Virus record (IMG/VR): IMGVR_UViG_3300005965_000002
Span: 186,001-250,000 of that record
Length of the DNA: 64,000 nucleotides
Strand: one strand, 5' to 3'
Position 1 is the stretch's first letter. Each line of letters starts with the position of its first letter. The notes under the pieces were generated by a model that worked only from the letters and a program-made list of their open reading frames with translations, did no database searches and was not told the DNA's origin. Positions 20,201 to 58,043 of the stretch are shown in pieces. The position numbers and the translations under genes are program-made.

Positions 20201-20665
20201 TTAATACGAATGATGAAACGTAACGGGTCTTTTATTCCTCTCGATGATTTAGGGAATCTTTCATTTGAAGTTTTCCAGAAAACTAGCAGCAGTGGGGTGC
20301 CCTCGTATAGGACACTTGATAGTGTTCTTACTTACCGGACTTCAGAAAACGGCGGGCCTGATCACCTTTTCCGTACCGTTTACGAGGATAATATCAGCTT
20401 AATGCTTGTAGATGACCCGACTGAGGTATCGCATGGTCCTGGTAGAGCTTATATACAGTCTGATGGTAGGATCATAGTCAGTACAAAAGACGGGGCCCCT
20501 CCACAAAGTAAATACTATAAAGCTGCCTATTACGTTTTATACCCAAATGATGTTAATGTAGCTGAGGATATAGAAACCACGGAAATTGAATACCTAGTGG
20601 TGGACTCAGCTAGTTTAAAAGATTTAGAAATTATAACTGAGCAAGTTACCAGAAGAGGATTATAA
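17267..20665 (+). CDS. Baseplate J-like (gp6/gpJ) wedge protein, 1132 aa
   Basis: ATGKVTFF...IPAGTQVST, VLGGSQGNVPAGSI...VTNTNPTNYGANRETNRELSERIKLAIAGVDSGTEGGY...VPGV...GGKVDIYI are characteristic Baseplate_J motifs. Extra N-terminal and internal beta-sandwich domains are present. Confidence 0.9.
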   Translation: MTIAAPIIEYPMTDWTGSGTDKYYTSELIQIISGTVPVTTADVQELGSIITVEFRYRITSGGTTSPYSNFSNAGITVGSTLSTATEIPWSLNTEGIVSFDVDDTIEFELKTVKRISNNQGAGYVSEESSLSKVTVGIIAEDKITASVIEPTGTRLERARDYIKVFVPVNSLKTNRDNDLVGVNFYISLDAGGGVNGYQKINQSYIVEADVSETESEVLQVSSTEDTTNNLTVTTTKTRQVQREYVTYTINSTVLNRLVSENKIRNVFLDNDATLNPDIVYYFVTTALSFDKSLKQVVESNYSVELEGEFLEYATDFQSIPGRNNSDIIFSVTKTLTTDNNTVNVIGGSVVRDILDPVALEFSKYYIIQDFIFKTLSVDTLIDFDDADGDGVSDPIETNIDKRNLADALGIRDGANLQLIINEQFDKRAANCNITRRDPIQATGKVTFFVSNAPTNDIIIPAGTQVSTAADPTTGSTSVAFTVVGTKLIDSSNPDFYYNPTLRRYEIEADVRAVLGGSQGNVPAGSIERATGLPSNIQVTNTNPTNYGANRETNRELSERIKLAIAGVDSGTEGGYKKTSESVPGVQQARVEKAGDELMVRDLDISSRRHLGGKVDIYIKGERRRQYIDQVAFKFEYPTDTFGKLSGERFYVINANEFRIQTRNTKVTATNPIISVSNVRNVTRGSDYDISGYRIIGDGDTVILENNQTNNRIGMATLDVIEVNYSYRSSNVITLEHQPVNTIISVTDSDGNLVDEAEYRLVRLEDPLLTGESSISKYGIEFLFDSQNDVNEFRQIDDEQHDMFLDIPISLSLKGVDIDSITVLNADDESIVYKKDIDYEVTGGTQVIPTQLSLLPNSAIRQGQRISVSYRANENFEVTYQANSLVEQAQEEVEKLKHADADVVVKQGIGNRVDISARVIKDGRLDSRYLESDRTVLKSRIQTAVANYVQKLRMGETFTQASLVNVIRSVPGVKDIKLPLIRMMKRNGSFIPLDDLGNLSFEVFQKTSSSGVPSYRTLDSVLTYRTSENGGPDHLFRTVYEDNISLMLVDDPTEVSHGPGRAYIQSDGRIIVSTKDGAPPQSKYYKAAYYVLYPNDVNVAEDIETTEIEYLVVDSASLKDLEIITEQVTRRGL

Positions 20666-25146: not shown

Positions 25147-26223
25147 ATGGAAATTCGTTTAGGAAAAAACAATGTCATTAGAAGAGTTAAGGATGGACAA
25201 GGCAATACTAAGTACATCGTTAACTTAGGTACTATCATATATAACAATGTATTTAAGACATTAGATAACCTTGAAATTCCTATTTTTAATGAATCCATAT
25301 TTAGATTGCCTGATGATGCCAATAAGTACGCTGCTGTAAACGCTTACTATAATGTAGAGCAAGGCAGGTTCATATTTAAGACAGTCAAGAAGTCTATCTC
25401 AAATATCGGCTCTGTTAAGTCTGATGTAGTATATAATTCACTTCCTATCTGCCAGTTCATTTTAAGGCAAGTAGACCCTACTTTTGAAGTTATTCAAGTC
25501 TATGAGTATTCACAAGCTGCTACTTTTAGTATCTCAGATTCTCTAGAAAAAGGAGAAAAGGGGCTGCAGGGTCCTTTAGGGCAGACAGGAGCTCAAGGAG
25601 AAACAGGAGCTTTAGGCATAACAGGAGCTTTAGGAGAAATAGGATATACGGGTATACAAGGACCTACAGGCGTAGGTGAGACAGGGTATCACGGCCCGCA
25701 AGGAGAAACAGGGTGGTATCCCGATCTTGATTTAACTTTTCACTTAAAATTTAAGAGTGCAGATACGGTGCAGGTCGATTACTCCGTTTATGAAAAAGAT
25801 TTTCAATGGATTTCTAGTGGTGCCTCCTATTTTTCTACAGAGACAGGAATAATTGATAATGCCCATTTTGCTCAGTACGTCGGTGGGACTTCTAGATATT
25901 TAAGAAATGAATACATTGGTATCGGTAAGTCAGGTATAGGTTCAACCGGTTCTTTTTCTATGTGGTTCCGTCTTGACGTTCCGCCAATTCCTTCTTTTAC
26001 GTATAGCATAGATTCACAAGTATCTACGAAGGTACGGTTTCAGGATACTTCTGAGAATTATCCGTCGAACTGGTTCTGGGAATTTGGTGGAATAAATAAG
26101 ACCAGCACCGGTACAGATATCCCTGTCATTGATTTTGAATCCTCAGGATCATATGAGGTTTCATTGACGGCTACTAACAATTATGGATCTAATAAAGTTA
26201 CTCAAATTGTAGTGGTTCCATAA
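25147..26223 (+). CDS. Collagen-like protein 1: shared N-terminal domain + Gly-X-Y repeat + N-terminal half of a LamG-like domain + PKD domain
   Basis: GEKGLQGPLGQTGAQGETGALGITGALGEIGYTGIQGPTG..., then DLTFHLKF...DYS...GSFSMWFRLD, then PSFTYS...FQDTS...WFWEFG...GSYEVSLTATN. Confidence 0.75.
   Translation: MEIRLGKNNVIRRVKDGQGNTKYIVNLGTIIYNNVFKTLDNLEIPIFNESIFRLPDDANKYAAVNAYYNVEQGRFIFKTVKKSISNIGSVKSDVVYNSLPICQFILRQVDPTFEVIQVYEYSQAATFSISDSLEKGEKGLQGPLGQTGAQGETGALGITGALGEIGYTGIQGPTGVGETGYHGPQGETGWYPDLDLTFHLKFKSADTVQVDYSVYEKDFQWISSGASYFSTETGIIDNAHFAQYVGGTSRYLRNEYIGIGKSGIGSTGSFSMWFRLDVPPIPSFTYSIDSQVSTKVRFQDTSENYPSNWFWEFGGINKTSTGTDIPVIDFESSGSYEVSLTATNNYGSNKVTQIVVVP
25552..25719 (+). repeat. Collagen-like Gly-X-Y repeat (13 triplets, a GV interruption, then 5 more)
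   Basis: Read directly from the translation. Thr occupies the Y position in 7 triplets. Confidence 0.9.
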
Positions 26224-26744
26224 TGGATAGAATATTAGCAATGATTCCGTTAAAAGATGGGCACGCCTTTAAGTCTGAGGTTTTAAGGGGCTTGTGCAAG
26301 CAAACAGTGCCTGTTGATATAATGGCTGTTTCTAGACCTAAAAGCGAAAGGCATCGTAATATTCCTGCGGGATATATATCGATGTCAGAATGTAGAAATA
26401 TAGCAAAAGAAGAGGGTTTGGAGCAATACAATTCTGAATATTTTCTTTTGCTCAATAGAGACGTGGTATTAAAAAGAGACACAGATATTGAGGATATGAT
26501 AAATTTTCTTCAGTTTAATAGAGATTTTGGAGCTGTAGCTATAAATACTAGAAAAAAAGAAATCCGATTATTGGTTGATAATACTCATACAGATATAGCA
26601 TGCATGGTAATAAGAAGAAGTATATTGGAGAAGATTACTTTTCATAATGAAAAACATTGTAATTGCAGATGCGTGTGTGGCTATATAAGATCTAACGGTT
26701 TGAGTGTGGGCTACATAGACCATAGAAAATGTCCGGAGATTTAA
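26223..26744 (+). CDS. Minimal GT-A fold (GT2-like) glycosyltransferase
   Basis: Ordered GT2 landmarks: ILAMIP, LRGLCKQT, SECRNIA, EYFLLLNRDVVL (DxD position reads N-R-D), FGAVA, DIACMVIRRSILEKITF. Coupled to both neighbours (TAATG and TAA-ATG). Confidence 0.65.
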   Translation: MDRILAMIPLKDGHAFKSEVLRGLCKQTVPVDIMAVSRPKSERHRNIPAGYISMSECRNIAKEEGLEQYNSEYFLLLNRDVVLKRDTDIEDMINFLQFNRDFGAVAINTRKKEIRLLVDNTHTDIACMVIRRSILEKITFHNEKHCNCRCVCGYIRSNGLSVGYIDHRKCPEI

Positions 26745-29700
26745 ATGCTAGATTCTGTTTATTTTGTAGACCTATCAGCTACGGGTACTAGCCACGCAGG
26801 TACACCAAAAGATCCTTTTTCTTATGAGGATTTTTCTAATATTGTTGGGCCTTCAACTGATGATGAGCTTTTCTATTTTAAGGGCCAATATACTATTACA
26901 TCTGCATCACCAGCATTTAATACGGGTGGCGGTAATAAAAGAATAATAGCATGGGACTTAGAAGAGTTTGGTCCTTGGAGATTAAAGGTAGAAGACTTTT
27001 CTAAATTTTCATTAGGATCTACTTTTATCATAGAAGATGGTATCCTTTTAATAGATGACACAGGGGATATATCTTTTGACTTATTTCAACTAGAAAACGT
27101 CTATTTATATAGAAAAACATCTACAATTACAGACAAATTTATATTGGGAGGCTCGGCTGCTTCTAATATCTATATGTCCACAGTACAGATAGATGGAATT
27201 TTAGAGTACGACACCGGATCCATAACTACTAGTTGTCTTAAGGTAGAGAACGGTATATCAATTCCTTCTACAGCATCCACCGCAGCACTAACCTATTCTA
27301 CTTACAACGGAGATTCTACTGCAGTTACTCCTGATCCTGGATTCTCAGGGTATTTTAACTTTGCGAACAACCAGGATTTATTTGATTTTACGGGAATTAC
27401 GGACATAAATGATGACCCGCAGTTCCCTTCCGGGATTACTGTATCCGACCCTTTTAATGACCCCATTACCTTCTTTTTTGACGGTAATCCCAAAGTTAGA
27501 TCCCAGGGTGCCTTTTATAGCAATGGGGCTAATCCAATAGTTTATGTAGATTTGAATAGTGGTGTCCCCGCTGGTAGTGGGACTTCCGGATCCCCCTATA
27601 ATTTTACTCAATTTTATTCTGACCTGGATACCCGGTCATATGACACGGGTACGATTATTAAGCTTAAAGGGATGGCACAAACTACTAATTATATTTCTAT
27701 AGGCCAAAGATCGTTTGAGGGACATCTACTATTAGAAAGGTGGGAGAGTAGTATCCCCTGGGGAATTCATACTACGGATGGTATATCAAATAGAGGTATA
27801 TCAAGAGGCGGAATATTTAAAACTGATGCCGATTTTATTAATACATTGGATTTGTCGAATACCTACTTAGAGGCAAATAGAGTAATACTGTATTCTACTG
27901 ATAGAGGTGCTAAGATTAAAGGATCTACAGTGATAAGTTCTGGCACCCCAACAAGGATAGGTGACTGCTACACTCCCGAGATATACCTATTTGTCGATTC
28001 TAATTACATAGATTCCGGGGTAGCGGATGTCGGGTCAGATGTTTTTGTGTGGTATTTTGGGTTGTCCACAGCGTTTAGCCAAGCCTCTAATTCCGAATCT
28101 GACTTTTTTGATCCTTCTGAGGGTATTATTAAGACCTTTCAATTAGATGATTGCGTTTTTGGTGTCACTCCCTCAGTGGTTTCTTTTTCTACTACTTTCG
28201 ATGAAAATAATTACTTATACCCTTCCGATATATATAATAGCATCACTACTACCTCTTCAGATTATAGCACGAAATCAGGTTACTCTACTGGTATCTCAGG
28301 CAATCCCAGATACGGGGTGGGTGCCTACTATTTTCCGGAGGTGGTAGCTTCCTTTACAGCGTCCCCTACTTCAGGCGGTATACCGTTAGAAGTGAATTTT
28401 AATAATGACTCTACAGGTATTATAACTGAATACTCATGGGATTTTGGAGATGGTACTACTTCTACAGAAGAAAACCCTGTAAAGACTTATACCAGTGCGG
28501 GTACTTATACGGTTACGTTGACAGTTACTGGGTTAGAAGGGATTACTGATACTTTTACTAGAACTGATTATATTATAGCAGTTGATTCACTCACAGCTGG
28601 GTTTTCAGGATCACCTTTATCTGGATCAGAGCCCCTCACTGTTAATTTTACGGATAGCTCAATCGGTGACATAAGTTATCGTATATGGAATTTTGGTGAT
28701 GGTACGGCTTTAGAAGATGTAACCGATCCATCTCATACTTATAGTAATCCAGGAACATATACCGTCTCTCTTACAGTGCGTGATGCAGATTCTAATGAAG
28801 ATACAGAAACTAAAACAGATTATGTAGAAGTATCCTCTGGACCTTTAACTGCTAATTTCACGGGTACCCCACAATCTGGAGAAAAACCACTTACTGTTAA
28901 TTTTACAGATAATTCTGCGGGCAGTATTACATACAGATTGTGGGATTTTGGAGATGGGAATACGCAAGAAAACGTTACTGACCCATCTCATACTTATAGC
29001 GACTCCGGCGTTTACACAGTTTCTTTAACTATTAGAGATGCATCTCTCAATCAAGATATAAAAACAAGAACCGAGTATATAACAGTTACAGAGCCGCCTC
29101 TAAATGCTGATTTTTCTGCTAGTCCTGTTTTTGGCACTGAGCCTTTATCAGTATCTTTTACAGATAGCTCTACAGGGGATATATCTTATAGGCTATGGAC
29201 CTTTGGTGACGGGACTTCTGAAGAAGATACCGTAAACCCCTCCCATACATATACCAGCCCTGGTTTATACACAGTCAGCCTGTTGGTGAGGGATCCTTCA
29301 TTAGAAGAAGATTTAGAGACAAAGGTTAACTACGTAACTGTAGGTGAAGATTTTATAGTAGCCGACAAGGTTTTGATGGAATCCAGTAATGCTTCTACAG
29401 GGGATTATTGGAAGATATACATAGATGACCAGAAAAGATTTGTTTTTGAGACCAATGTATATATATGGAGAACTGTAGATCCTCAAGCTGAGATTAAAAA
29501 ATGGACGTTTATCCAATTTTTACCGCATAAAGATACCATGTACGTTGGGAAATACAGCTCTGGTTGGAAAAAAGTAGATCTTGTTAAATTCATTAACGGG
29601 TCTCCGGATACTCCAACCAGCACCAGAACGTATGTCGTTCCGAATTCTACATTTAAGATAGACGACATTCAAATATGGGATAAAGAAGTAAACAAAAAAA

Positions 29701-29753
29701 CCCATTTTCAGCAAAATAGGGGTAAAGCGGGATTACTGGATAATCGATCCTAA
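26745..29753 (+). CDS. Adhesin-like protein: two beta-helix-like modules + 4 PKD domains + C-terminal half of a LamG-like domain
   Basis: WDLEEFGPWR module. Four F-x-G/A-x-P-x-x-G-x-x-PL-x-V-x-F-x-[ND]-x-S-x-G...WxFGDG...GxYTVxL repeats. Terminal WKIYID...KWTFI...YVG...KIDDIQIWDK. Confidence 0.75.
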   Translation: MLDSVYFVDLSATGTSHAGTPKDPFSYEDFSNIVGPSTDDELFYFKGQYTITSASPAFNTGGGNKRIIAWDLEEFGPWRLKVEDFSKFSLGSTFIIEDGILLIDDTGDISFDLFQLENVYLYRKTSTITDKFILGGSAASNIYMSTVQIDGILEYDTGSITTSCLKVENGISIPSTASTAALTYSTYNGDSTAVTPDPGFSGYFNFANNQDLFDFTGITDINDDPQFPSGITVSDPFNDPITFFFDGNPKVRSQGAFYSNGANPIVYVDLNSGVPAGSGTSGSPYNFTQFYSDLDTRSYDTGTIIKLKGMAQTTNYISIGQRSFEGHLLLERWESSIPWGIHTTDGISNRGISRGGIFKTDADFINTLDLSNTYLEANRVILYSTDRGAKIKGSTVISSGTPTRIGDCYTPEIYLFVDSNYIDSGVADVGSDVFVWYFGLSTAFSQASNSESDFFDPSEGIIKTFQLDDCVFGVTPSVVSFSTTFDENNYLYPSDIYNSITTTSSDYSTKSGYSTGISGNPRYGVGAYYFPEVVASFTASPTSGGIPLEVNFNNDSTGIITEYSWDFGDGTTSTEENPVKTYTSAGTYTVTLTVTGLEGITDTFTRTDYIIAVDSLTAGFSGSPLSGSEPLTVNFTDSSIGDISYRIWNFGDGTALEDVTDPSHTYSNPGTYTVSLTVRDADSNEDTETKTDYVEVSSGPLTANFTGTPQSGEKPLTVNFTDNSAGSITYRLWDFGDGNTQENVTDPSHTYSDSGVYTVSLTIRDASLNQDIKTRTEYITVTEPPLNADFSASPVFGTEPLSVSFTDSSTGDISYRLWTFGDGTSEEDTVNPSHTYTSPGLYTVSLLVRDPSLEEDLETKVNYVTVGEDFIVADKVLMESSNASTGDYWKIYIDDQKRFVFETNVYIWRTVDPQAEIKKWTFIQFLPHKDTMYVGKYSSGWKKVDLVKFINGSPDTPTSTRTYVVPNSTFKIDDIQIWDKEVNKKTHFQQNRGKAGLLDNRS
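28343..29342 (+). repeat. Four tandem PKD-domain repeats
   Basis: Four ~83-aa units with WDFGDG/WNFGDG/WTFGDG cores, similar at both protein and DNA level. Confidence 0.9.
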
Positions 29754-29760
29754 CATTAAA

Positions 29761-29775
29761 CCATGATCTATTAAT
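29761..29775 (+). promoter_or_regulatory. Candidate late-promoter motif CCATGATCTATTAAT
   Basis: Shares the ATCTATTAAT core with the other copies. Lies in the 64-nt gap before the 2xPKD gene. Confidence 0.5.
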
Positions 29776-29817
29776 ATTTTTCCCTTATCATTACATGCAG
29801 CGAATAGATGAGGGAAT

Positions 29818-30288
29818 ATGAGTTTAGATGCGGCTTTTACAGTAAATTCAAATGTAGGCGCGGCTCCTTTTAGTGTAACTTTTTCATCTACACTTTTAGA
29901 GGGCACAGCTTCTTCCTATTTGTGGGATTTTGGGGATGGCACCACTAGTACTCAAGCATCTCCTACACATACTTACAATAACTTAGGCTTATATACTGTT
30001 AAGCTTACAGTTTCTAATAGTAGTACTTCAGAGTCTATTACCCTCACAAAAAATAAGCATATAATTGTTGTAGCTGTAGATTTTGAAGCTATCCCTGTAC
30101 AGGGATATGCTCCGTTGTCGGTAAAATTCACCGACAAAAGCACAGCTCCTACGGGTTTTTCTATTGCTTCAAGATCCTGGAGCTTTGGAGATGGGTCTAG
30201 TGCGGTCACATCTCAAAACCCTGTCCATTCGTACTCGCAACCGGGTACATATGCTGTTGATCTACAGCTTACGGTAAAGAGGACATAA
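29818..30288 (+). CDS. Small protein of two PKD domains only
   Basis: AAFTVNSNVGAAPFSVTF...YLWDFGDG...GLYTVKLTV and VDFEAIPVQGYAPLSVKFTDKS...WSFGDG...GTYAVDL. Confidence 0.85.
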   Translation: MSLDAAFTVNSNVGAAPFSVTFSSTLLEGTASSYLWDFGDGTTSTQASPTHTYNNLGLYTVKLTVSNSSTSESITLTKNKHIIVVAVDFEAIPVQGYAPLSVKFTDKSTAPTGFSIASRSWSFGDGSSAVTSQNPVHSYSQPGTYAVDLQLTVKRT

Positions 30289-30289
30289 A

Positions 30290-34297: not shown

Positions 34298-34306
34298 GAG
34301 GGCGTA

Positions 34307-37300: not shown

Positions 37301-40300
37301 ACCGACACAACTTACTTTAGAGATGTCTTTGTAAGGGCGAGTGACCAGATAATAATAGGGTCTGGGGGATATGAGTTCTACGGCGACACGCTTCTTTCCG
37401 AAGCTAATCCCATAGCTTTTGTAGAGACAGTACCTCTAAGCCAGAACAATACCTGGTCTTATATAAACGATGGTTTTGTAGGCGGTGAATATAACACTTG
37501 GTGGAGTACCGATTTTAGAACAGGTACTGACGCATGGGAGCTTGAGGAAATACCCGAAGGTAGTGATAACTGGGTAGCGGTTCAGAATAGTTCTGTAAAT
37601 GTAAGGCTGACTCCTACGGGAGTAGCTTTAACTGGAGATTTTGTTTATAGATTCTGTATAGTAGATTCTAAAACTGGATTAGGAAATAGATCAGAAAAGT
37701 TTTATATATATGACGATACTGCGGGAACAGCTCGAGGCGGAATTGAATTCAGTATGGGCACAAATGTGCTCGAATTTGTAGATGCTTCCTTAGTAACTCT
37801 CGATTCTGTTATAGTGCCTACGGATCTTTATGACAAAATCTATATAGAGTTAAGGAGAAAAGATGGCGTAATTACTGCATCTTACTCCCCATATGTGCCA
37901 GATAATTATACGGATTTTTCTGGATCGTATACTTATGCCGACCCACATTACATAGTAATGGAGGGTGGTGATGTTATAGGTGCAGGCTGCTTTGCTCTGC
38001 AGGTTGAGGGTTCTACACCAGGGGATACTTCTAGTTTACCATATGGAGCAAAAGACCTTGATGCTATTCTAAAGGATTCTGTAATAGATACTCTCACTGT
38101 TTCTGAATCTTCATGGTCTTTTAATAGCATAAGTCTTTCTTATATAGCACAAACAGATAGTACGTGGTCAGCTAGTGGCTTAGTGTATTCCGGAACCAAT
38201 CAGTCTGGATGGGTTTCAGCTACTTGGCCAGCTTGGTCCTCCGTTTTATCTAATACAAAGGCAGATTTTGGGCTTTCTGTTATAGGATCAGGAATCACTC
38301 TATCAGGTTCAGGAAATTATACCAATTATAATGAGGGTCTGTGGGGAGAAATTAGAACAAATGTTGGGGCGTATTACTTTGATACAGCTCTAAATTTTAC
38401 GGCTTCTCCCACTCTAGCCTATTTTAGCCCTACTAACCCGGCACCTGTTACATTTACAGCAATTGATGATACGGGCGCTACCTCATGGAGATGGGATTTT
38501 GGGGATGGTACTGATTTTTATACTACCGATCCTTTATTTAAAAACCCGACCCACAGCTATACGTCAGAAGGTGTGTTTACTGTCTCCTTGACTATAAACG
38601 AATCCCCTGTTACTACAGTTACTAAAGCGGGATACATAATAATTCTTAGGACTCTAGAAGCTACCATAGTAGCTGATCCTCGTTTTTACTATGGGGCTAT
38701 ACCTCCTGGCGGGCTTCCTGTAGATTTTGGAGTAACTAACCCCACTAGGACATTAGATCCTACACCTGCTGGGGTTTACCCTGGTTTTTCCTGGGATTAT
38801 GGAGACGGATCTGCTGTAGTCACAGGATTAACGGGGCCTTCCCACGATTTTACTTCTTATGGAACGTTTAATGCACAATTAACAGTAAGAGACATAGGAG
38901 TTTCGGGTCTAGATTCCACAAAGCAGCTCACATCATTTGATATTGATGTTAAGATTTATAATCTAACTATATCTGTAAGCCCTACTTTAGGTAAAAAGCC
39001 TTTAGTTGTCAATTTTACAGCGACGCCTGCCTCTGGATTTTCTCCTGTGTCCTATCATTGGATATTCAGAGATGGGGCGGAATCATCCTCTCAGAGCCCG
39101 ACGCATCAGTATACAACTGAAGGAGTGTATGATACAGTACTGATAATAGATCAAGGTTTTGCTACTCAACAGATATTTAGCTCGGATGCAAGTTATCCAG
39201 GAGTCGATGTTGTTGACCCTGATATGCAAGTAATTGTATCCAGCGTTGATTCTGTTTTTACCGTATCTCCTATTTATGGGTATATTCCTTTAACCGGCTT
39301 GTTTGAAGACAATAGTATAGGTAATATAACCGGTTGGCAGTGGGATTTTGATGATGGCTCCTCTCAGGTACTAGGGGAAACAGGACTTTTTCATATCTAC
39401 GACACGGCTAATACATATAATCCTACACTTACCGTGTATGATATATACGGTCTTACGGATACATCTTCTGCAGAGGTGATAGCATTATCTCCTTTAGATA
39501 TAGATGTCTCAGATTCGACACCAACCGTAACTCAGTCAGTAACCTTCAGCCCTGTTAATGATACTTACGCTAATCAATGGGTGTGGGATCTTATTTATGT
39601 GGATCCAATACTCGGAGAGATAACAATAGATCGAAAAACAACTTCTACACAAGCTGACAGAAACTACGTAAAAGATATAGTAGTACCTGGTGATTATAAA
39701 ATCCAACTTACTATTACGGATGACCTGGGTAACTCGTATAGTAAAATCGAATCTTTTACAGCATCCGAAAATATCAGCATCGTCACTGATCCTTCTCCCG
39801 CTACAGGAGAAGTTCCTTTAGAGGTTGATTTTTCTACTTCTGGTTTGGACCTGACAGGAATTAATAGTATTAAATGGGATTTAAATGGTGATGGGACAAC
39901 GGATTCAACAAGCGATACTTCTTCTTATACTTATAATACTCCGGATACTTATTCTTCTACCCTGGTAGTAGAGTGGCATATTGAGGATGTTGACAACTCA
40001 GCGCTATCTACTACGGTGTCTATCCAGAGAGGAATTTTTGTAATAGCCGGTCAGAATCCTCTTGTGATTTCGATTTCTGCTAATCCCTTACATGGACATA
40101 AACCTCTTGTGTCTACTTTTGCAGGATCTGCAAATAATAGCGTTTCTACCTGGAAGTGGGAAGTAAGAAAAGCATCGACCTCATATACTACTATCGGTTC
40201 AACACAGCAGATTACATATACTTTTTCTGAGTCCGGTGAGTACTCGGTTAGACTTACAGTTACGGATGTGTATGGGGAAACTGATTCTGCTACTGTAAGA

Positions 40301-40495
40301 ATAACTGTCGTAAACGATATCTCCACTTACGATAGAGCCCCGGATCCAGATAAGTTAATGGAGATTACCGGGCCTGGGCAGCTTCAGATTTTTAATGGTG
40401 GTAGAGGCGTACGCTTTAGGATACCGAGTGGGGAAACAAGCCAAAAACCCTATGGCTTTAAGAGATCCAACGGGCCTAGCCATATATATGATTAG
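34307..40495 (+). CDS. Large adhesin-like protein (2062 aa): PMP-like beta-helix + three W[DN]x4GPW modules + ~7 PKD domains
   Basis: YVNESASGSNNGTTWTDAY...GDELWVAQGTY. Five FxxN...GGA[IVL] repeats. DPNFVD...DLRL...CIDAG...DMGAYEF (choice-of-anchor-Q-like end). C-terminal PKD array. Confidence 0.78.
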   Translation: MAIIYVNESASGSNNGTTWTDAYTSLVTALSSATDGDELWVAQGTYSPGGAAGDFFDVAVSNLSIYGGFRGDEVNKNQRDRTRFESILDGDGVNEAILKNTNTTYPSTLIIDSLYFENCAGDFFLSALVFNYSGTDGDDNLEVYNSVFRNNSGFDGGAVTIIGNAFYSYWKIENCEFYNNTASRNGGAIYVGGTYVGGTNIRNCMFHNNSAVRGGAVYISTRLNVLESCAFYNNTVTENGGAVYNTLTTATFRNNSFYGNTAGINGGALFIVNSNTDPYNCVFYGNTATSSGNDIYVDPFVLGSEINYCSATSLSAPDVVNITIGSSNVAGDPNFVDPSNGDLRLKYTSQCIDAGDGDNATTYDIEGNPRVQVKTSPAGTGSPNYTDMGAYEFSDAVKRYYVQLSNSYTSTGHTGSYNDPYSYEDFVSNISAATGRAIYLLKGTRSSSLSDITATSLYQVSLIAWDLNEYGPWRILQPSNAFDVDAYMQDGIVDAERIYSLNGSKRMYMQGSAASTTDYIAGTHEQTNFVNTGTSNPFTVETGDTATVDRCIFNGNEVFVDTGATFTVSNSVSNIITGGAFLTGTGTISSSNMTYGWNPPVLPSNTSTDLTVFSLDGGTSPATISDTAGVGYDDGWANGESIFVNLSVSSTGNDGYYGENAVGLTEFIAALSDGLTFYLRGKASLPSSTNITITSGTASFKAWNLSKYGPWKLEINKNAVGGFSSGRVNMQGGSIRNNYSGGAGDLFLNNGEDLYIESVGNQSTIYGNLTRCTLNFDTRVLVQSDSSATFNNCILNKTGSAKLDCQNVGVDLIISNSISDASNFADLVDDNSSGGALVYGEDNTFNWTAPTLPDWDTSDYNEYRLAGSPSAIYYGVQSFLTTIYVDIASSNDTSLTEGGDSSSPASYIYLNDVISRMRGGDFRLKGVRDITNTAADEIYWLNEGIPYRNNLLSDWDNDTEGPWRLRADKVTLSGVNLFNGIIYSDKHVYLTGYTIEPYTDTTYFRDVFVRASDQIIIGSGGYEFYGDTLLSEANPIAFVETVPLSQNNTWSYINDGFVGGEYNTWWSTDFRTGTDAWELEEIPEGSDNWVAVQNSSVNVRLTPTGVALTGDFVYRFCIVDSKTGLGNRSEKFYIYDDTAGTARGGIEFSMGTNVLEFVDASLVTLDSVIVPTDLYDKIYIELRRKDGVITASYSPYVPDNYTDFSGSYTYADPHYIVMEGGDVIGAGCFALQVEGSTPGDTSSLPYGAKDLDAILKDSVIDTLTVSESSWSFNSISLSYIAQTDSTWSASGLVYSGTNQSGWVSATWPAWSSVLSNTKADFGLSVIGSGITLSGSGNYTNYNEGLWGEIRTNVGAYYFDTALNFTASPTLAYFSPTNPAPVTFTAIDDTGATSWRWDFGDGTDFYTTDPLFKNPTHSYTSEGVFTVSLTINESPVTTVTKAGYIIILRTLEATIVADPRFYYGAIPPGGLPVDFGVTNPTRTLDPTPAGVYPGFSWDYGDGSAVVTGLTGPSHDFTSYGTFNAQLTVRDIGVSGLDSTKQLTSFDIDVKIYNLTISVSPTLGKKPLVVNFTATPASGFSPVSYHWIFRDGAESSSQSPTHQYTTEGVYDTVLIIDQGFATQQIFSSDASYPGVDVVDPDMQVIVSSVDSVFTVSPIYGYIPLTGLFEDNSIGNITGWQWDFDDGSSQVLGETGLFHIYDTANTYNPTLTVYDIYGLTDTSSAEVIALSPLDIDVSDSTPTVTQSVTFSPVNDTYANQWVWDLIYVDPILGEITIDRKTTSTQADRNYVKDIVVPGDYKIQLTITDDLGNSYSKIESFTASENISIVTDPSPATGEVPLEVDFSTSGLDLTGINSIKWDLNGDGTTDSTSDTSSYTYNTPDTYSSTLVVEWHIEDVDNSALSTTVSIQRGIFVIAGQNPLVISISANPLHGHKPLVSTFAGSANNSVSTWKWEVRKASTSYTTIGSTQQITYTFSESGEYSVRLTVTDVYGETDSATVRITVVNDISTYDRAPDPDKLMEITGPGQLQIFNGGRGVRFRIPSGETSQKPYGFKRSNGPSHIYD

Positions 40496-40503
40496 GATAT
40501 GAT

Positions 40504-41151
40504 ATGTTAAAAAGTAAAAAGAACACGATAAATGCTTCTTTAAAACCAACTATATCTAAGGGGACTGTTAGAATAAATGCGGGTTCCTTTGTATTTGATA
40601 ATAATTGGATAAATTTTAGAGGCAAACTGTTTAAGCTAGATGACTATATAGGTAGGGTCTTAGCTCCGCCTAGGACAAGGTTTTTTAATGATCGAAATTA
40701 CGCTTTCTATTTAGTTATTGGATTAGATAAAAATGGGGAGCTGACTTATTTAGAGGGTAACCAGGTAAAGTTTTCTTCTATTAAGTCTGTACCAGTACCG
40801 TCTGTGATAGATATTATTCCTCTTGTGGGGCTTATTGTTATTCAGGATGGCTCTAGAGATCTAAACTTTGGCTACAAACCTTTGAATGATTCCAATGTCA
40901 TATTTTTTTCTGGTGCCGGTAATGTCCTCGATAAAGATAAAAAGGGAATTCAGGGAGAATCAAATAGATCATATGGGTATACAGGGCTGTTGGGGGAGAC
41001 AGGAATAGAGGGAGAGCGGGGCGCAAAAGGCTTGAGGGGTGAGACTGGAATAATTGGCCCTACTATTTATGGGGATCGGGGGGAAACCGGTACTAAAGGT
41101 ATGACAGGAATTAACTGGAATATACATATTCCCTTTGAATTCTTTCTCTAA
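40504..41151 (+). CDS. Collagen-like protein 2: shared N-terminal domain + Gly-X-Y repeat, no C-terminal domain
   Basis: GYTGLLGETGIEGERGAKGLRGETGIIGPT...GDRGETGTKGMTG. The N-terminal domain aligns by eye with 41180 and 25147. Confidence 0.78.
   Translation: MLKSKKNTINASLKPTISKGTVRINAGSFVFDNNWINFRGKLFKLDDYIGRVLAPPRTRFFNDRNYAFYLVIGLDKNGELTYLEGNQVKFSSIKSVPVPSVIDIIPLVGLIVIQDGSRDLNFGYKPLNDSNVIFFSGAGNVLDKDKKGIQGESNRSYGYTGLLGETGIEGERGAKGLRGETGIIGPTIYGDRGETGTKGMTGINWNIHIPFEFFL
40945..41115 (+). repeat. Collagen-like Gly-X-Y repeat (about 17 triplets, two interruptions)
   Basis: Read directly from the translation. Thr at the Y position in 6 triplets. Confidence 0.9.
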
Positions 41152-41163
41152 TTATCTAATAAT
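41149..41163 (+). promoter_or_regulatory. Candidate late-promoter motif TAATTATCTAATAAT
   Basis: Overlaps the upstream stop codon exactly as at 16491 and 49000. Confidence 0.55.
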
Positions 41164-41179
41164 AACTTTGGCTTAAAAT

Positions 41180-42409
41180 ATGGCATTTAGAACTAGAAAA
41201 GTAGCTGATTTCTCTACCCTTAATAAAGATGTTAATGTCCACGGCGAGAATGTCGTGTCCATTAAAGGGGGCTCTGTTGCTATCGGAGATACCTGGATAC
41301 AGTTTAAAGGTACTAAAATTGATCTCCAGGATTTTGTAGAAAAGTATATAACCAATTCAAGAAGGTTGTTTAATCAGCGATTTGGTGTGCTTTATGTATT
41401 GATAGCGATTAACGAGAAAGCACAGTTAGAAGTAATACCTAGTATATCGTATAACAAGACATCGACCGGTGATGTTAAAGTTTTTCCTAGTTTATCGAGT
41501 AAATTACCTATAATGGTAGTTAAGCTTACCCAAGATGGAAGCTACGGGTTAACCGGTATTAGTAGAATAACTGAAAGCGATGTAGAACAGTACTTAGGGT
41601 ATGGTAATTTTACTCTGAGGGGCCCTCAGGGAGAAACAGGGGGTCTTGGCAGTACCGGTTTTCAAGGACTTACCGGTTTTATCGGAGCTACTGGTTATTC
41701 TGGTCCTACAGGGCTACAAGGAGAGACCGGAATTAATAGTTTTTCTGTAAAAGGGTATCCTGGAGTTAGAGGAGAGCAGGGGGAGAGCCTTCCAGCTTTT
41801 GAACCGACCAGATATGCGATTCCAGTAGCAAATTTTGTAGGTGCCCCTTTAAGCGGAGAAGCAAGTCTTTCTGTATCCTTTACCGATTTATCAAACGGAA
41901 ATCCAACTTCCTGGCTATGGGATTTTGGGGATGGAAATACTTCTACTCAACAGAATCCGACTCATAGTTACGCTTCAGCTGGGACATATACTGTGTCTTT
42001 GGTAACTACGAGCCCAGCTGGTGAGGATCAAGAGATTAAATATGATTACATAACAGTTACCGAAGCATTAGCTGCTGATTTTGCGGTAACCCCCACAGAA
42101 GGTGACGAGAGAGTAACTACATTTAATTTTGATGGCAGTTTCTCAGCCGGAACGATAACTTCATATAGTTGGGATTTTGGAGATTCAATTTCTGCTACGG
42201 GAGAGACTGCGACCCATGTTTATAATGGGGTATCTGGTCAAATTACAGTATCCCTTACAGTAACGGGGCCTTCTGGCTCAGATACTGTATCAAAAACTAT
42301 TACTGTGGACGGGTACATAATACAGAGCACAACAGATGACGATGAAGATACCTGGCAGGATACAGCGGATAGTTCAGAGGATAATGTACAAAATTCATCG
42401 GAGGAATAA
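41180..42409 (+). CDS. Collagen-like protein 3: shared N-terminal domain + Gly-X-Y repeat + 2 PKD domains + acidic tail
   Basis: GPQGETGGLGSTGFQGLTGFIGATGYSGPTGLQGETGIN...GYPGVRGEQGES, two WxWDFGD PKD units, and a D/E-rich end. Confidence 0.8.
   Translation: MAFRTRKVADFSTLNKDVNVHGENVVSIKGGSVAIGDTWIQFKGTKIDLQDFVEKYITNSRRLFNQRFGVLYVLIAINEKAQLEVIPSISYNKTSTGDVKVFPSLSSKLPIMVVKLTQDGSYGLTGISRITESDVEQYLGYGNFTLRGPQGETGGLGSTGFQGLTGFIGATGYSGPTGLQGETGINSFSVKGYPGVRGEQGESLPAFEPTRYAIPVANFVGAPLSGEASLSVSFTDLSNGNPTSWLWDFGDGNTSTQQNPTHSYASAGTYTVSLVTTSPAGEDQEIKYDYITVTEALAADFAVTPTEGDERVTTFNFDGSFSAGTITSYSWDFGDSISATGETATHVYNGVSGQITVSLTVTGPSGSDTVSKTITVDGYIIQSTTDDDEDTWQDTADSSEDNVQNSSEE
41621..41788 (+). repeat. Collagen-like Gly-X-Y repeat (13 triplets, interruption, 4 more)
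   Basis: Read directly from the translation. Thr falls at Y in every second triplet of the first 12. Confidence 0.9.
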
Positions 42410-44293
42410 ATGTCCAGCAATTCAACTGATAAACATATTTTGGCCATAACTGGGACGACCGCTCAGTTGTTCTGTGGCACACAAGCTCAGACTTTAAAAA
42501 GTCCTCAAATAGCAATAGAAACTACATCGGATATAAGACAATCCTTTGACTCTCGTCTGGTATTTAGAAATGCTTGTGGATGGTTTAGGCACGGAGCTGT
42601 ATTGGATGACCTGGACGCCAACAAAATGGTAGGCGGTCTTCATCGAGCAAGGAACCTGACACAGATAGAAGCTGATCTGGATTACCCTGCTACTGGCTGG
42701 ACTAGTTTAAGAGCATGTGGGATGCTAGCTTATGTGTGGGATGATGATAAGTATTATAAATTAGAGAGCGATCTTACAACCTGGACAGAATTAAAATTCG
42801 ATGTCACGCAACTTAATGACTTAAATGACGTTCAGATAAACTCTGTTGCTAAAAACCAGGTCTTGGTGTACGACACCGCTAACTCTAAATGGAATAACAT
42901 AGCCTACTCCTTAGCTAATTTGCCGGATACTACTGTTAGTTCTCCTGCTGAAAATCATATATTAAAATATGATAGTAGCACATCAAAATGGATCAATGCC
43001 GTCAACTCTTTGACTAATTTATCTGATACTAGTATCGGTTCTCCGTCAGGAGATCAGTACCTAAAGTTTAATGGTGGCTCTTCTAAGTGGGAAGCTGCTA
43101 CTCTTAGTCTTAATCTTGATGATATAGCTGATGTAGATATTACATCGGTTGAAGATGGTAGCATGCTTTATTATGACGGTACTAATAAAAGTAAATGGGT
43201 GAATACTACGACTTTAAGTATATCTTCGACAGGAAAATTGACTGTTAATTGTGACGATACCTTGTTTTGTGGAACTATAACTTTATATAGGTCAGATGAT
43301 CCCCATTACGGTCTTTTTATAAAAGATAATGTAACTTCTAGATATATAGACTTAAGTATTTCAGATTCTGACTATATGTATTTCCGCGCTGTATCAGATT
43401 CCACTACTCAACCTATTATTAACTACGAATACGTCTTAAGCGACTCTACGTCCGATAGTGGTAGCGAACCCGCCCATTTAATGGAATACTCTATATCTGG
43501 TGGGTCGAAAGTAGTTAACAGGGATTTATTAAGGATTGATAATGGTTCTGCGGGTTCTAAAGTTATACTCACTCGTTTGCGAGGAGATGGGGAGCTAAAT
43601 TTAAATTTTTATGGTGACGCAGACTTTGGTGGACATACGGTAGGTAGAAAGATGCTTCATTTTCAGTTACACGATGATGGTTTTTCTAATCCAGCTATGT
43701 CTGCAGATGATAACCCACTAGAAAAAACTATAGGAATTATAAAACCTATTTACGATGACGTCATGTACGGATCTGGGCACGGAGGGTTGAACATTACATC
43801 CTACAGTGATTCATCTATATCTATGATATTATGTGGTGTTTCACCATCGCCCCCTACTTATGACGGTTACCCTTCTAATACTGAAGCCGTAGTAACCGTA
43901 GTGGCAGCCACTACTTCAGGGGGATCCTTAGCCTCTTTAGTGGCAGCCGATAATGCGTTCGCCGTGCTTAATAGAGACAGAGGATTACTGTTAGTAAAAG
44001 GAAATGGAGATTTAATTATTGATGGTTCTCAATCGTCCTATGACGCAGAAGACGATTTACAGTTAGTGGAAACTGCAAAACTTACATTAGCCGGGATAAC
44101 AGAGGGTGTCATTGATAAGTACAAAGAAAGACTTAATTCTCTGGGCATCATGCACGGTAACTTAATTAATGTACGTAAGATGCACGCCCTGGAGTTAGGT
44201 GCGTTAGGTCAGATGATGAATATGGTCAGAGGTTTAGCGGAAAAAATAGGTGTCTCGGAAGACGAGCTTTTTGCCATGTCTAAAGTTTATTAA
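42410..44293 (+). CDS. Tail fibre-like protein with tandem shaft repeats and a possible C-terminal chaperone-like region
   Basis: GGAGG SD. Four L-x-[DN]-[LI]-x-D-x-x-I/V...L-x-[YF]-[DN]...KW repeats. C-terminal NLINVRKMHALELGALGQM...helix resembles intramolecular-chaperone-type ends. Confidence 0.65.
   Translation: MSSNSTDKHILAITGTTAQLFCGTQAQTLKSPQIAIETTSDIRQSFDSRLVFRNACGWFRHGAVLDDLDANKMVGGLHRARNLTQIEADLDYPATGWTSLRACGMLAYVWDDDKYYKLESDLTTWTELKFDVTQLNDLNDVQINSVAKNQVLVYDTANSKWNNIAYSLANLPDTTVSSPAENHILKYDSSTSKWINAVNSLTNLSDTSIGSPSGDQYLKFNGGSSKWEAATLSLNLDDIADVDITSVEDGSMLYYDGTNKSKWVNTTTLSISSTGKLTVNCDDTLFCGTITLYRSDDPHYGLFIKDNVTSRYIDLSISDSDYMYFRAVSDSTTQPIINYEYVLSDSTSDSGSEPAHLMEYSISGGSKVVNRDLLRIDNGSAGSKVILTRLRGDGELNLNFYGDADFGGHTVGRKMLHFQLHDDGFSNPAMSADDNPLEKTIGIIKPIYDDVMYGSGHGGLNITSYSDSSISMILCGVSPSPPTYDGYPSNTEAVVTVVAATTSGGSLASLVAADNAFAVLNRDRGLLLVKGNGDLIIDGSQSSYDAEDDLQLVETAKLTLAGITEGVIDKYKERLNSLGIMHGNLINVRKMHALELGALGQMMNMVRGLAEKIGVSEDELFAMSKVY
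42812..43204 (+). repeat. Four ~33-aa fibre shaft repeats
   Basis: LNDLNDVQI...VLVYDTANSKW / LANLPDTTV...ILKYDSSTSKW / LTNLSDTSI...YLKFNGGSSKW / LDDIADVDI...MLYYDGTNKSKW. Confidence 0.85.
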
Positions 44294-58000: not shown

Positions 58001-58043
58001 AATATTAGTATTTAGCTTCATTTTTCAGATTAACTGTTAAAAT

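What the first reader, a model, noticed from the sequence alone, without database searches (positions are those of the whole stretch)
25147..44293. A ~19 kb collagen-PKD-beta-helix-glycosyltransferase cassette inside the baseplate operon: candidate undescribed glycosylated virion appendage system
Seen: nine co-oriented, tightly coupled genes between the J-like and I-like wedge genes. They carry three collagen-like paralogs, about 21 PKD domains in six proteins (1+4+2+5+7+2 by eye), two PMP-like beta-helices, six copies of a shared module, LamG-like domains, a GT2-like enzyme and a fibre gene. The proteins are very Ser/Thr-rich and none has a signal peptide or membrane anchor. Known: phages display Ig-like domains for adhesion (T4 Hoc), and giant eukaryotic viruses and Bacillus spores glycosylate collagen-like fibres. 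Inference: a self-contained kit that builds branched, possibly glycosylated adhesive fibres (collagen stalks carrying cell-surface-type adhesins) on the virion.
Basis: partly seen in the sequence, partly recalled or inferred. Interest (0 to 1): 0.82.

Follow-up and report, generated by a model that had tools for sequence, protein, structure and literature searches.

The report
Huge-phage baseplate adhesin gene block
An uncultured huge phage carries, inside its baseplate operon, a block of collagen-like stalk proteins and large adhesin-like proteins that most likely form host-binding appendages; it is a real and little-described variant of a known theme, but the proposed glycosylation is not a core part of it.

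Summary
Nine co-oriented, tightly packed genes (25147-44293) encode three collagen-like paralogs, 19 firm plus 2 degenerate PKD domains, two PMP-like beta-helices, six copies of a ~185-aa module, one sub-threshold LamG-like domain, a fibre-repeat protein and a small GT-A-fold protein.

The window is part of a 258.6-kb viral contig. Composition is uniform, and the layout recurs in five diverged lineages from independent assemblies, so it is not a chimera.

The block, plus the upstream BNR fibre paralog (20668-25143), lies between the gp6/J-like and gp7/I-like wedge genes. Those two genes are adjacent in the two distant relatives examined.

- **Constant parts:** the BNR protein, the collagen trio (a clade-restricted N-domain, 44 clusters in 1.84 billion proteins), a short PKD protein and a 2-PKD protein.
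- **Variable parts:** the large beta-helix/PKD proteins between them.
- **Patchy parts:** the GT-A protein occurs in 2 of 5 lineages, always directly before a protein that starts with two module-A copies. The fibre gene c9 occurs in 1 of 5.

Best reading: a lineage-specific peripheral baseplate adhesin or receptor-binding apparatus. Glycosylation is possible but accessory and unproven. This is a new variant of a known kind, of moderate interest.

The parts
17267..20665 (+). gp6/J-like baseplate wedge gene (upstream flank of the block)
   Evidence: Pfam Baseplate_J 64.4 bits; phrog_6 baseplate wedge subunit E 9e-22
20668..25143 (+). BNR beta-propeller protein (1491 aa). Clade-specific paralog of the conserved fibre-like gene at 50642-54211. 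First gene of the inserted block.
   Evidence: PSII_BNR 108.7 bits. Shares its N-terminus and a ~230-aa region with g50642. Present next to J in all five lineages.
25147..26223 (+). c1: N-domain, 14 collagen triplets (25552-25677), ~100-aa linker domain, 1 PKD
   Evidence: orthologs at 36-48% identity in four other lineages
26223..26744 (+). c2: minimal GT-A-fold protein (173 aa). N78-R79-D80 sits at the DXD position.
   Evidence: AF2 pLDDT 79, pTM 0.80. Foldseek hits TarP, STIV A197, TarS and SpsA at E 1e-6 to 4e-5. Only 5 clusters in 5.8 billion proteins. Pfam GT2 17.5 bits, below the cut-off.
26745..29753 (+). c3: two module-A copies (26757-27323, 27537-28073), 4 PKD (28350-29291) and a ~150-aa C-terminal domain. 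Only the last PKD and the C-terminal domain are conserved in lineages that lack c2.
29818..30288 (+). c4: protein of two PKD domains, kept as a separate ~153-156-aa gene in the L016 and L039 lineages
30290..34297 (+). c5: PMP-like beta-helix (30290-31459), 4 PKD plus 1 degenerate (31469-32773), module A (32837-33406), LamG-like region (about 33875-34162)
34307..40495 (+). c6: PMP-like beta-helix (34307-35386), three module-A copies (35501-36031, 36227-36769, 36950-37453), 6 PKD plus 1 degenerate (38393-40264)
   Evidence: Chlam_PMP 38.9 bits. Cellular beta-helix homologs down to E 1e-137. Also.
40504..41151 (+). c7: N-domain plus collagen (40975-41115) plus a 12-aa tail. Length is 214-216 aa in all lineages.
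41180..42409 (+). c8: N-domain, 13 collagen triplets (41621-41737), 2 PKD, acidic tail
42410..44293 (+). c9: fibre-like protein with four ~35-aa phage-fibre repeats (residues ~104-270). Found only in this phage and one 91%-identical fragment.
44299..49002 (+). gp7/I-like wedge gene (downstream flank)
   Evidence: Its N-terminus matches the gene that directly follows J in LR745208.1 (E 6e-11) and in Tunturi_5 gp240 'baseplate protein' (E 5e-5)

Best explanation
The 23.6-kb block from 20668 to 44293 is a lineage-specific peripheral-baseplate module of an uncultured huge phage. It is the nine flagged genes plus the BNR gene just upstream.

The block sits between the gp6/J-like and gp7/I-like wedge genes and is most likely expressed with them as late structural genes. 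It has four kinds of component.

1. A constant scaffold. This comprises a BNR beta-propeller paralog of the phage's conserved fibre-like protein and three short collagen-like proteins (c1, c7, c8). The three share a clade-restricted N-terminal domain followed by a triple-helix segment of about 12 nm. Two small PKD proteins (the short form of c3, and c4) complete the scaffold.

2. A fast-evolving, domain-shuffled set of large proteins (c3 long form, c5, c6). They are made of right-handed beta-helix modules, PKD arrays and a LamG-like domain. These are the domain types of bacterial cell-surface adhesins and glycan binders, but here they lack a signal peptide or a T9SS sorting domain.

3. One extra fibre-repeat protein (c9), in this phage only.

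4. An accessory minimal GT-A-fold protein (c2), always directly upstream of, and abutting, a protein that begins with two module-A copies.

Proposed working (inferred): the collagen proteins trimerise and act as constant connectors or stalks at the baseplate rim. The variable beta-helix/PKD proteins give multivalent, probably glycan-directed binding to the host envelope or its matrix, and they determine host range. If c2 is an active glycosyltransferase, it most likely modifies the adjacent module-A protein, or a host glycan, rather than the collagens.

Shown: gene content, domain identities, paralogy, position, conservation pattern and the GT-A fold. Inferred: presence in the virion, trimerisation, what binds what, and any glycosylation.
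For: Position and coupling. The genes are co-oriented with gaps of -1 to 64 nt and show no excess of promoter or terminator signals. The block is flanked by Baseplate_J and by an I-like gene. Homologs of that I-like gene directly follow J in LR745208.1 and Tunturi_5, which lack the block.

Conservation. J, BNR, c1, PKD proteins, c7, c8 and I recur in five diverged lineages from different samples and assemblers.

Evolutionary rate. Between the window and L016, identities are J 58%, BNR 59% and I 56%, against c1 48%, c4 43%, c5 28-40%, c6 41%, c7 53% and c8 48%. The number and architecture of the middle proteins differ between lineages. That pattern is typical of receptor-binding modules.

Collagen N-domain. 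It is found in only 44 clusters at 50% identity among 1.84 billion proteins. All 44 fall into the c1, c7 or c8 orthogroups, and 41 of the 44 have a collagen run, which follows the N-domain in all but one. Each lineage whose whole cassette was captured keeps all three.

Domain identities. PKD E 1e-63 to 1e-29. Chlam_PMP 38.9 bits. The c6 N-terminus has cellular homologs annotated as parallel beta-helix or choice-of-anchor Q proteins, many carrying T9SS sorting domains. Module A begins with a conserved 'YVD...GT...P' motif, and its weak structure and feature matches all point to right-handed beta-helices.

No signal peptides or membrane segments were found.

c2. It has a GT-A fold. It is 62% identical between the window and the L042 lineage, where J and BNR are only 51%, so it is a constrained, functional protein. 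In four independent contexts it is always followed directly by a protein that starts with two module-A copies.

Precedent. Modular PKD/Ig-like phage adhesins have been shown experimentally (PMC13370021, PMC10385173).
Against: - No virion proteomics, imaging or isolate exists for this clade, so virion association rests on gene position and the absence of secretion signals.
- None of the large proteins has a recognisable baseplate-attachment domain.
- The fold of module A is only weakly supported (best Foldseek E 0.05; pLDDT 69).
- The N-domain has no structural or functional assignment.
- The beta-helix modules could be enzymes rather than binders.
- The host is unknown.
Confidence: 0.6

Rival explanations
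1. The nine genes are a self-contained kit in which the GT2-like enzyme glycosylates collagen-like or Ser/Thr-rich fibres, as in Bacillus BclA or the fibrils of giant viruses. The result would be branched, glycosylated virion hairs.
For: c2 has a GT-A fold, is strongly conserved and is tightly packed against its neighbours (it overlaps the c1 stop codon by 1 nt, and the c3 start codon follows its stop with no gap). The collagen segments are rich in G-X-T triplets and the large proteins are 21-30% Ser/Thr. Phage virion glycosylation has a precedent in mycobacteriophages (Freeman et al. 2023, PMC10527164, as cited in PMC12619734).
Against: c2 is absent from 3 of the 5 lineages that keep all three collagen proteins and the PKD proteins. 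c2 tracks the long c3 form, not the collagens. The DXD position reads N-R-D, and the usual acidic residue after strand 2 is replaced by S-R-P. The Pfam GT2 score is below its cut-off. Nucleotidyltransferases (IspD, KdsB) match the fold almost as well. No sugar-nucleotide synthesis genes lie in the window.
Confidence: 0.15
2. The beta-helix modules (the PMP-like N-termini and module A) are catalytic polysaccharide depolymerases. On this view c3, c5 and c6 are tailspike-type enzymes that digest capsule or exopolysaccharide, not passive adhesins.
For: The weak structural neighbours of module A are pectate or rhamnogalacturonan lyases and phage tailspikes. ESM Atlas leads point to DUF1565, NosD and Beta_helix. 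Multi-depolymerase arrays are known in other large phages (own knowledge).
Against: No structural match is significant (best E 0.05). Across 19 module-A copies only G, W, P and W are invariant, with no conserved acidic or basic candidate catalytic residues. The closest cellular relatives are adhesin-type PMP or choice-of-anchor Q proteins, not characterised lyases.
Confidence: 0.2
3. The proteins decorate the capsid or tail sheath, as Hoc does, to stick to environmental matrices. They are not baseplate receptor-binding proteins.
For: PKD/Ig arrays are the hallmark of Hoc-type decoration proteins and of phage adhesion to mucus or matrix (PMC10385173, PMC13370021).
Against: The genes are embedded between wedge genes, not in a head module. 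The BNR gene is a paralog of a fibre-like gene. No capsid-binding domain was detected.
Confidence: 0.1
4. Artefact: a chimeric assembly that joins cellular adhesin genes to phage DNA, or non-functional remnants.
For: The domains are of cellular surface-protein type.
Against: GC is uniform at 0.34-0.42 across the window. An identical sequence occurs in two IMG/VR contigs from different samples. The synteny is conserved in JGI, ENA and Logan assemblies of four further lineages at 35-59% protein identity with intact long ORFs.
Confidence: 0.02

Closest known systems
Modular Ig-like/PKD phage adhesins (T4 Hoc; PKD/BACON adhesins of gut phages that infect Bacteroidota; PMC10385173, PMC13370021)
   Same: Tandem PKD domains on phage-encoded, non-secreted structural-module proteins. 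The architectures are modular and shuffled. The presumed role is weak, multivalent binding to glycans or surfaces.
   Different: Here the PKD arrays are fused to beta-helix modules in 1000-2000-aa proteins. They sit between baseplate wedge genes, not in a head module. They are accompanied by a fixed trio of collagen-like proteins. No capsid-binding domain is present.
Collagen-like phage tail fibres (PHROG 'collagen like minor tail' and tail-fibre families such as phrog_8745, phrog_366 and phrog_30509)
   Same: Short G-X-Y triple-helix segments in phage tail proteins. c1, c7 and c8 hit these PHROGs through the collagen segment.
   Different: The similarity is limited to the collagen repeat. The N-terminal domain is restricted to this clade (44 clusters). 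It is present as three ancient paralogs per genome, and the collagen length is conserved (14 triplets in most c1 and c8 orthologs).
Multi-RBP, branched tailspike or fibre arrays of large myoviruses (CBA120, RaK2, phiK64-1 type; own knowledge)
   Same: Several receptor-binding or beta-helix proteins encoded in a row beside baseplate genes. Adaptor parts are constant and distal parts are variable.
   Different: No T4 gp10-like adaptor domains were detected. The candidate connectors here are collagen-like. The distal proteins resemble PMP/choice-of-anchor Q adhesins plus PKD arrays, not classical trimeric tailspikes. Branching is untested.
Bacterial PMP/choice-of-anchor Q parallel beta-helix surface proteins, many of them T9SS cargo in Bacteroidota
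   Same: The ~400-aa N-terminus of c6, and c5 through its homology to c6, are clear homologs (E down to 1e-137; Chlam_PMP, Beta_helix and DUF5123 in the hits).
   Different: The phage proteins lack signal peptides and the Por_Secre_tail sorting domain. They are encoded in a virion operon.
Minimal viral GT-A glycosyltransferases (STIV A197) and prophage TarP; mycobacteriophage virion glycosylation (Freeman et al. 2023)
   Same: c2 is a small GT-A-fold protein (TM 0.58-0.66 normalised to the query; E 1e-6 to 1e-5) encoded next to structural genes.
   Different: Sequence identity is 10-17%. The DXD position is N-R-D. The family has only 5 clusters. No activity, donor or acceptor is known. The gene is present in only 2 of 5 lineages.

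Membership tests
PKD domain (PF18911/PF00801) | Profile match above the Pfam gathering score | tested here: met
   c1, c3, c4, c5, c6 and c8 score 30.7-210.5 bits against a cut-off of 27. A window-derived HMM finds 19 domains.
Collagen triple-helix repeat (PF01391) | Uninterrupted G-X-Y run and a profile match above the cut-off | tested here: met
   c1 has 14 triplets (30.7 bits) and c8 has 13 (27.3 bits); the cut-off is 27.2. c7 has 10+5 triplets but scores 25.8 bits, just below.
Glycosyltransferase family 2 (PF00535) | Profile match above the gathering score | tested here: not met
   c2 scores 17.5 bits against a cut-off of 23.3. It matches profile positions 69-161 only.
GT-A fold nucleotide-sugar transferases | Rossmann-like GT-A fold | tested here: met
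   AF2 model with pTM 0.80. There are 141 PDB matches at E<=0.001. The top matches are TarP, A197, TarS and SpsA; IspD and KdsB nucleotidyltransferases also match.
GT-A fold nucleotide-sugar transferases | DXD metal-binding motif after the central strand | tested here: inconclusive
   N78-R79-D80 is invariant in all 5 family members, at the end of strand 73-77. Only the last Asp is kept.
GT-A fold nucleotide-sugar transferases | Sugar-transfer activity on a defined acceptor | not testable with these tools
   Needs a biochemical assay.
Chlamydia PMP-type / right-handed parallel beta-helix | PMP repeat profile above the cut-off, and homology to beta-helix proteins | tested here: met
   c6 residues 1-400 score 38.9 bits against a cut-off of 20.6, in 3 stretches. 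Homologs carry Beta_helix, NosD and DUF5123. c5 1-364 matches c6 1-339 at E 5e-26.
Right-handed beta-helix (module A) | Significant fold match to a beta-helix | tested here: inconclusive
   AF2 pLDDT 69, pTM 0.72. The best Foldseek E is 0.05, yet most of the top matches are beta-helix lyases or tailspikes. ESM Atlas leads score 0.82-0.86.
Laminin G / ConA-like lectin (PF13385) | Profile match above the gathering score | tested here: inconclusive
   The c5 C-terminus scores 26.7 bits against a cut-off of 27.6. No other region matches.
Tail fibres with a Peptidase_S74 intramolecular chaperone | C-terminal S74 domain | tested here: not met
   c9 has no Pfam hit at E<=1. There is only an ESM feature lead of 0.90. 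Homology to other proteins is limited to the fibre repeats.
Contractile-tail baseplate wedge (gp6/J with gp7/I) | J-like and I-like genes flank the block | tested here: met
   Baseplate_J 64.4 bits. The I-like N-terminus matches the post-J gene of two distant phages.
Virion structural component | Detected in purified particles | not testable with these tools
   No isolate exists. The closest cultured phage (Tunturi_5, 28% J identity) lacks the block.

The most novel reading that the evidence does not exclude
The three ancient collagen paralogs (c1, c7, c8) may co-assemble into a C1q-like heterotrimeric stalk. They share one clade-specific N-domain, and c1 and c8 orthologs have triple-helix segments of conserved, matching length; c7's is of similar length. 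Such a stalk would be a new kind of baseplate connector that docks interchangeable, cell-surface-type beta-helix/PKD adhesins. In some lineages a dedicated minimal GT-A enzyme would glycosylate the module-A adhesin. That would make this a previously undescribed, partly glycosylated adhesin-display apparatus of huge phages.
Probability: 0.15. Interest if true: 0.75.

Novelty: new variant of a known kind. Interest (0 to 1): 0.45.

Why it matters
Huge phages are known almost entirely from metagenomes, and how they recognise hosts is largely unknown. This block gives a concrete, conserved candidate for the host-recognition apparatus of one such clade.

Its split into constant parts (the collagen trio, the BNR protein and the small PKD proteins) and variable parts (the beta-helix/PKD giants) could guide host-range prediction and structural work.

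The clade-restricted collagen N-domain and the five-member GT-A family are new protein families with clear genomic context.

If c2 proved to be a protein glycosyltransferase acting on a baseplate adhesin, virion glycosylation would extend beyond the mycobacteriophage capsid and tail-tube cases.

Tried and rejected
- Nucleotide search of 20001-44500 against 50,697 GenBank phage records found no match. The first attempt was one base too long.
- A profile of the c2 family against PDB sequences gave no meaningful hit. Only the fold search was informative.
- PHROGs gave nothing for c2-c6. For c1, c7 and c8 it gave only collagen-segment matches.
- Foldseek of module A returned nothing significant.
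- ESM Atlas for c7 and for the c3 N-terminus returned only low-score leads.
No host or prophage information was obtained.
- A direct-repeat scan for template/variable repeats of a diversity-generating retroelement found only the diverged PKD 'WDFGDG' core, at no more than 74% DNA identity. No tRNAs were found.
- Literature searches for a described collagen/PKD baseplate cassette in jumbo phages found nothing specific.
- I considered that c2 is a fibre assembly chaperone. The GT-A fold makes this less likely, but it is not excluded.
- I considered that c3 and c4 are one gene split by a stop. This was rejected because the short c3 form and c4 are separate genes in the L016 and L039 lineages.

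Full report
**Where the window comes from**

The window is bases 186001-250000 of the 258,580-bp viral contig IMGVR_UViG_3300005965_000002. An identical copy occurs in a second sample, 3300025377_000091.

GC content is even, 0.34-0.42, across the window. The + strand carries one long run of genes:
- a gp5-like hub gene;
- a 3221-aa giant protein;
- a J/gp6-like wedge gene at 17267-20665 (Baseplate_J 64.4 bits);
- the flagged region;
- a 1567-aa gene at 44299-49002;
- more structural genes;
- from 55.5 kb, a replication module of SNF2 helicase, DnaB-like helicase and primase zinc ribbon.

There is no nucleotide match to any of 50,697 GenBank phage records. By J protein, the nearest records are a 485-kb uncultured phage (LR745208.1, 29% identity) and the 309-kb Tunturiibacter phage Tunturi_5 (28%). 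This is a diverged huge phage with no cultured close relative.

**Checking the observation**

Gaps between them run from -1 to 64 nt, and promoter-like and terminator-like sites are not enriched.

Pfam confirms:
- collagen repeats in c1, c7 and c8;
- PKD domains in c1, c3, c4, c5, c6 and c8;
- Chlam_PMP repeats in the c6 N-terminus (38.9 bits against a cut-off of 20.6);
- a near-threshold Laminin_G_3 match in the c5 C-terminus (26.7 against 27.6 bits);
- a sub-threshold GT2 match in c2 (17.5 against 23.3 bits).

A PKD HMM built from the window finds 1+4+2+4+6+2 = 19 firm domains. Two degenerate PKD-sized segments fill the gaps in c5 and c6.

An iterated HMM seeded on the c3 N-terminus finds exactly six copies of a ~185-aa module, which I call module A. 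There are two in c3, one in c5 and three in c6.

c5 and c6 share a ~360-aa N-terminal domain (E 5e-26). c1, c7 and c8 share an N-terminal domain plus collagen.

Ser/Thr content is raised, at 21-30%, in c3, c4, c5, c6 and c8. A hydropathy scan finds no signal-like or membrane segments.

Two details need correcting. Only one LamG-like region is detectable. A tenth gene also lies between the J-like and I-like genes: the 1491-aa BNR protein at 20668-25143.

**The block is an insertion between wedge genes**

The N-terminus of the 44299-49002 protein matches the gene that directly follows J in two distant phages:
- LR745208.1, a 1763-aa protein (E 6e-11);
- Tunturi_5 gp240, annotated 'baseplate protein' (E 5e-5).

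In those two phages J and the I-like gene are adjacent. The 42-kb regions examined there contain none of the collagen N-domain, PKD, module A or c2.

The BNR protein is a paralog of the window's own fibre-like gene at 50642-54211. The two share an N-terminus and a ~230-aa internal region. Homologs of that gene exist in both distant phages; in Tunturi_5 it is annotated 'tail fiber protein'.

So the BNR gene plus c1-c9, 23.6 kb in all, is a clade-specific addition to a conserved J-I wedge backbone.

**Conservation in relatives**

I recovered four further lineages, from JGI, ENA and Logan assemblies.

| Lineage (locus) | J identity to the window | Gene order downstream of J |
|---|---|---|
| L016 | 58% | BNR, c1 (352 aa), short c3 (222 aa), c4 (154), c5-like (1621 aa, 9 PKD), c6-like (1871 aa, four module A, 6 PKD), c7 (215), c8 (300), I |
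| L039 | 51% | BNR, c1, short c3, c4, six different proteins (four with PKD domains), c7 (215), a 111-aa protein, c8-like |
| L042/L017 | 51% | BNR, c1-like (383), 514 aa (module A), c2 homolog (174 aa), 834 aa (two module A plus PKD), 274, 1657, c7 (214), c8 (296), I |
| L047 | 44% | BNR, c1, then a 1108-aa PKD-rich protein and further proteins up to the locus end |

The parts differ in how widely they are kept:
- Constant parts: BNR and c1 are in all five lineages. c7 and c8 are in all four whose cassette end was captured. Short c3 and c4 are separate genes in L016 and L039.
- The large middle proteins differ in number, size and domain order between lineages.
- Module A is in 3 of 5 lineages and the PMP-like N-terminus in 2 of 5.
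- c2 is in 2 of 5 lineages and c9 in 1 of 5.

Cassette proteins are less conserved than the wedge proteins. Between the window and L016, c1 and c3-c8 are 28-53% identical, while J, BNR and I are 56-59%. A constant frame around a shuffled interior is what receptor-binding modules usually look like.

The conserved synteny across independent assemblies also removes the chimera objection.

**The collagen trio**

I ran an exhaustive HMMER search of 1.84 billion representative proteins with a profile of the ~140-aa N-domain. It found only 44 clusters.
- All 44 fall into the c1, c7 or c8 orthogroups, at 34-50% identity to the window's copies.
- 41 of the 44 have a collagen run, which follows the N-domain directly in all but one. 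The three without a run are short, probably truncated sequences.
- The run is typically 42 residues, or 14 triplets, in both the c1 and c8 groups.
- Full-length c7 orthologs are nearly always 214-216 aa.

The triplication therefore predates the clade, and all three copies are retained. Fourteen triplets correspond to about 12 nm of triple helix, using the standard rise per residue (own knowledge).

I could not assign a fold or a binding partner to the N-domain.

**The large proteins**

The first ~400 residues of c6 have many cellular homologs (E down to 1e-137). These carry Beta_helix, Chlam_PMP, NosD and DUF5123 domains. Many also carry the T9SS Por_Secre_tail sorting domain, and their source names include 'choice-of-anchor Q domain-containing protein [Bacteroidota]', Hymenobacter, Saprospiraceae and Lewinella. 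c5 shares this domain through its homology to c6. The phage proteins lack both the sorting domain and a signal peptide.

Module A begins with a conserved 'YVD...GT...P' motif; from my own knowledge this resembles the N-terminal cap of right-handed beta-helices. Other evidence on its fold is weak:
- The AF2 model is mostly beta strand (pLDDT 69, pTM 0.72).
- The best Foldseek E-value is only 0.05, but most of the top hits are pectate or rhamnogalacturonan lyases and tailspikes.
- ESM Atlas leads point to DUF1565, NosD and Beta_helix.

Only G, W, P and W are invariant across 19 copies of module A. That argues for a structural or binding role rather than a shared catalytic site, without excluding enzymes.

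**c2**

Only five clusters of c2 exist among 5.8 billion proteins.

The AF2 model (pLDDT 79, pTM 0.80) has a GT-A fold:
- TarP, E 1e-6, TM 0.64;
- STIV A197, TarS and SpsA;
- the related nucleotidyltransferases IspD and KdsB, with slightly weaker E-values.

The position of the DXD motif reads N78-R79-D80, invariant in all five members. From my own knowledge of the GT-A fold, the usual acidic residue after strand 2 appears to be replaced here by S-R-P, and an invariant H-x-D at 122-124 could supply a catalytic base.

c2 is the best-conserved gene between the window and the L042 lineage, at 62% identity against 51% for J and BNR. It also has the lowest GC in the block, 0.345.

In all four contexts found, c2 is followed immediately by a protein that begins with two module-A copies. 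Lineages without c2 have only the short c3.

c2 is thus a constrained, probably enzymatic accessory tied to the long c3 form. It is not tied to the collagen proteins, which persist without it.

**c9**

c9 carries four ~35-aa repeats of a type shared with many phage fibre proteins. Its homology to other proteins is limited to these repeats, at residues ~104-270. ESM Atlas features resemble Peptidase_S74 tail-fibre clusters (0.90, a lead only), but Pfam finds no S74 domain. c9 occurs in this phage and in one 91%-identical fragment only.

**Interpretation**

The best-supported reading is a lineage-specific peripheral-baseplate apparatus for adhesion and receptor binding.
- The collagen trio, the BNR protein and the small PKD proteins form the constant frame.
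- The beta-helix/PKD giants are the variable, probably glycan-directed binders.
- c9 is an extra fibre.
- c2 is an optional modifier.

Virion location, trimerisation, who binds whom, and any glycosylation are all inferred.

**Comparison with what is known**

- PKD/Ig-like modular phage adhesins are established: T4 Hoc (PMC10385173) and gut Bacteroidota phages (PMC13370021).
- Collagen-like segments in phage tail fibres are common enough to define PHROG families.
- Multi-RBP arrays beside baseplate genes are known in other large myoviruses (own knowledge).
- Phage virion glycosylation has been shown in mycobacteriophages (Freeman et al. 2023, cited in PMC12619734).

What is new here is the combination of four things: a clade-restricted collagen N-domain in three fixed paralogs; PMP/choice-of-anchor Q-type beta-helices fused to PKD arrays on a phage; insertion between the gp6-like and gp7-like genes; and a five-member minimal GT-A family linked to one adhesin.

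I rate it a new variant of a known kind, of moderate interest (0.45).

Noticed in passing
window 3571-13236 (+): A 3221-aa ORF with no Pfam or PHROG family lies between the gp5-like hub gene and the wedge genes. It is conserved at 27-44% identity in relatives (L004, L005). It may be a giant tape-measure or inner-tail/hub protein.
   Followed up: partly
window 20668-25143 and 50642-54211 (+): Two paralogous large proteins share an N-terminal ~135-155 aa and a ~230-aa internal region. The downstream one has homologs in LR745208.1 and in Tunturi_5 (annotated tail fiber protein). The upstream one carries a BNR/Ycf48-like beta-propeller and is specific to the clade.
   Followed up: partly
window 26223-26744 (+): c2 has the lowest GC of the block (0.345, against 0.37-0.42 for its neighbours). 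It is nevertheless the most conserved gene between the window and the L042 lineage (62% identity, against 51% for J and BNR). Its distribution is patchy. This is compatible with transfer between lineages together with the long form of c3.
   Followed up: partly
window 49063-49656 (+): A 197-aa protein starting at GTG has a weak match to 'Baseplate wedge 3 tail fiber network component' (23.6 bits, below the cut-off) and a strong match to phrog_5417. Its homologs follow the I-like gene in LR745208.1 and also occur in Tunturi_5.
   Followed up: partly
L039 15248-16788: In one relative, a 439-aa PKD protein and a 74-aa PKD protein overlap by 4 nt. This may be a split or frameshifted gene in the variable middle of the cassette.
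   Followed up: no
window 55551-60120 (+): The replication module (SNF2-family helicase, DnaB-like helicase, CHC2 primase zinc ribbon) follows the structural operon on the same strand.
   Followed up: no
window 42305-42409 (c8 C-terminus): c8 ends in a ~30-residue, strongly acidic, Asp/Glu/Ser-rich tail. The shorter c8 orthologs (296-300 aa) have one PKD domain fewer, and alignments to them cover only residues 1-293 of c8, so the tail is not matched. Its function is unknown.
   Followed up: no
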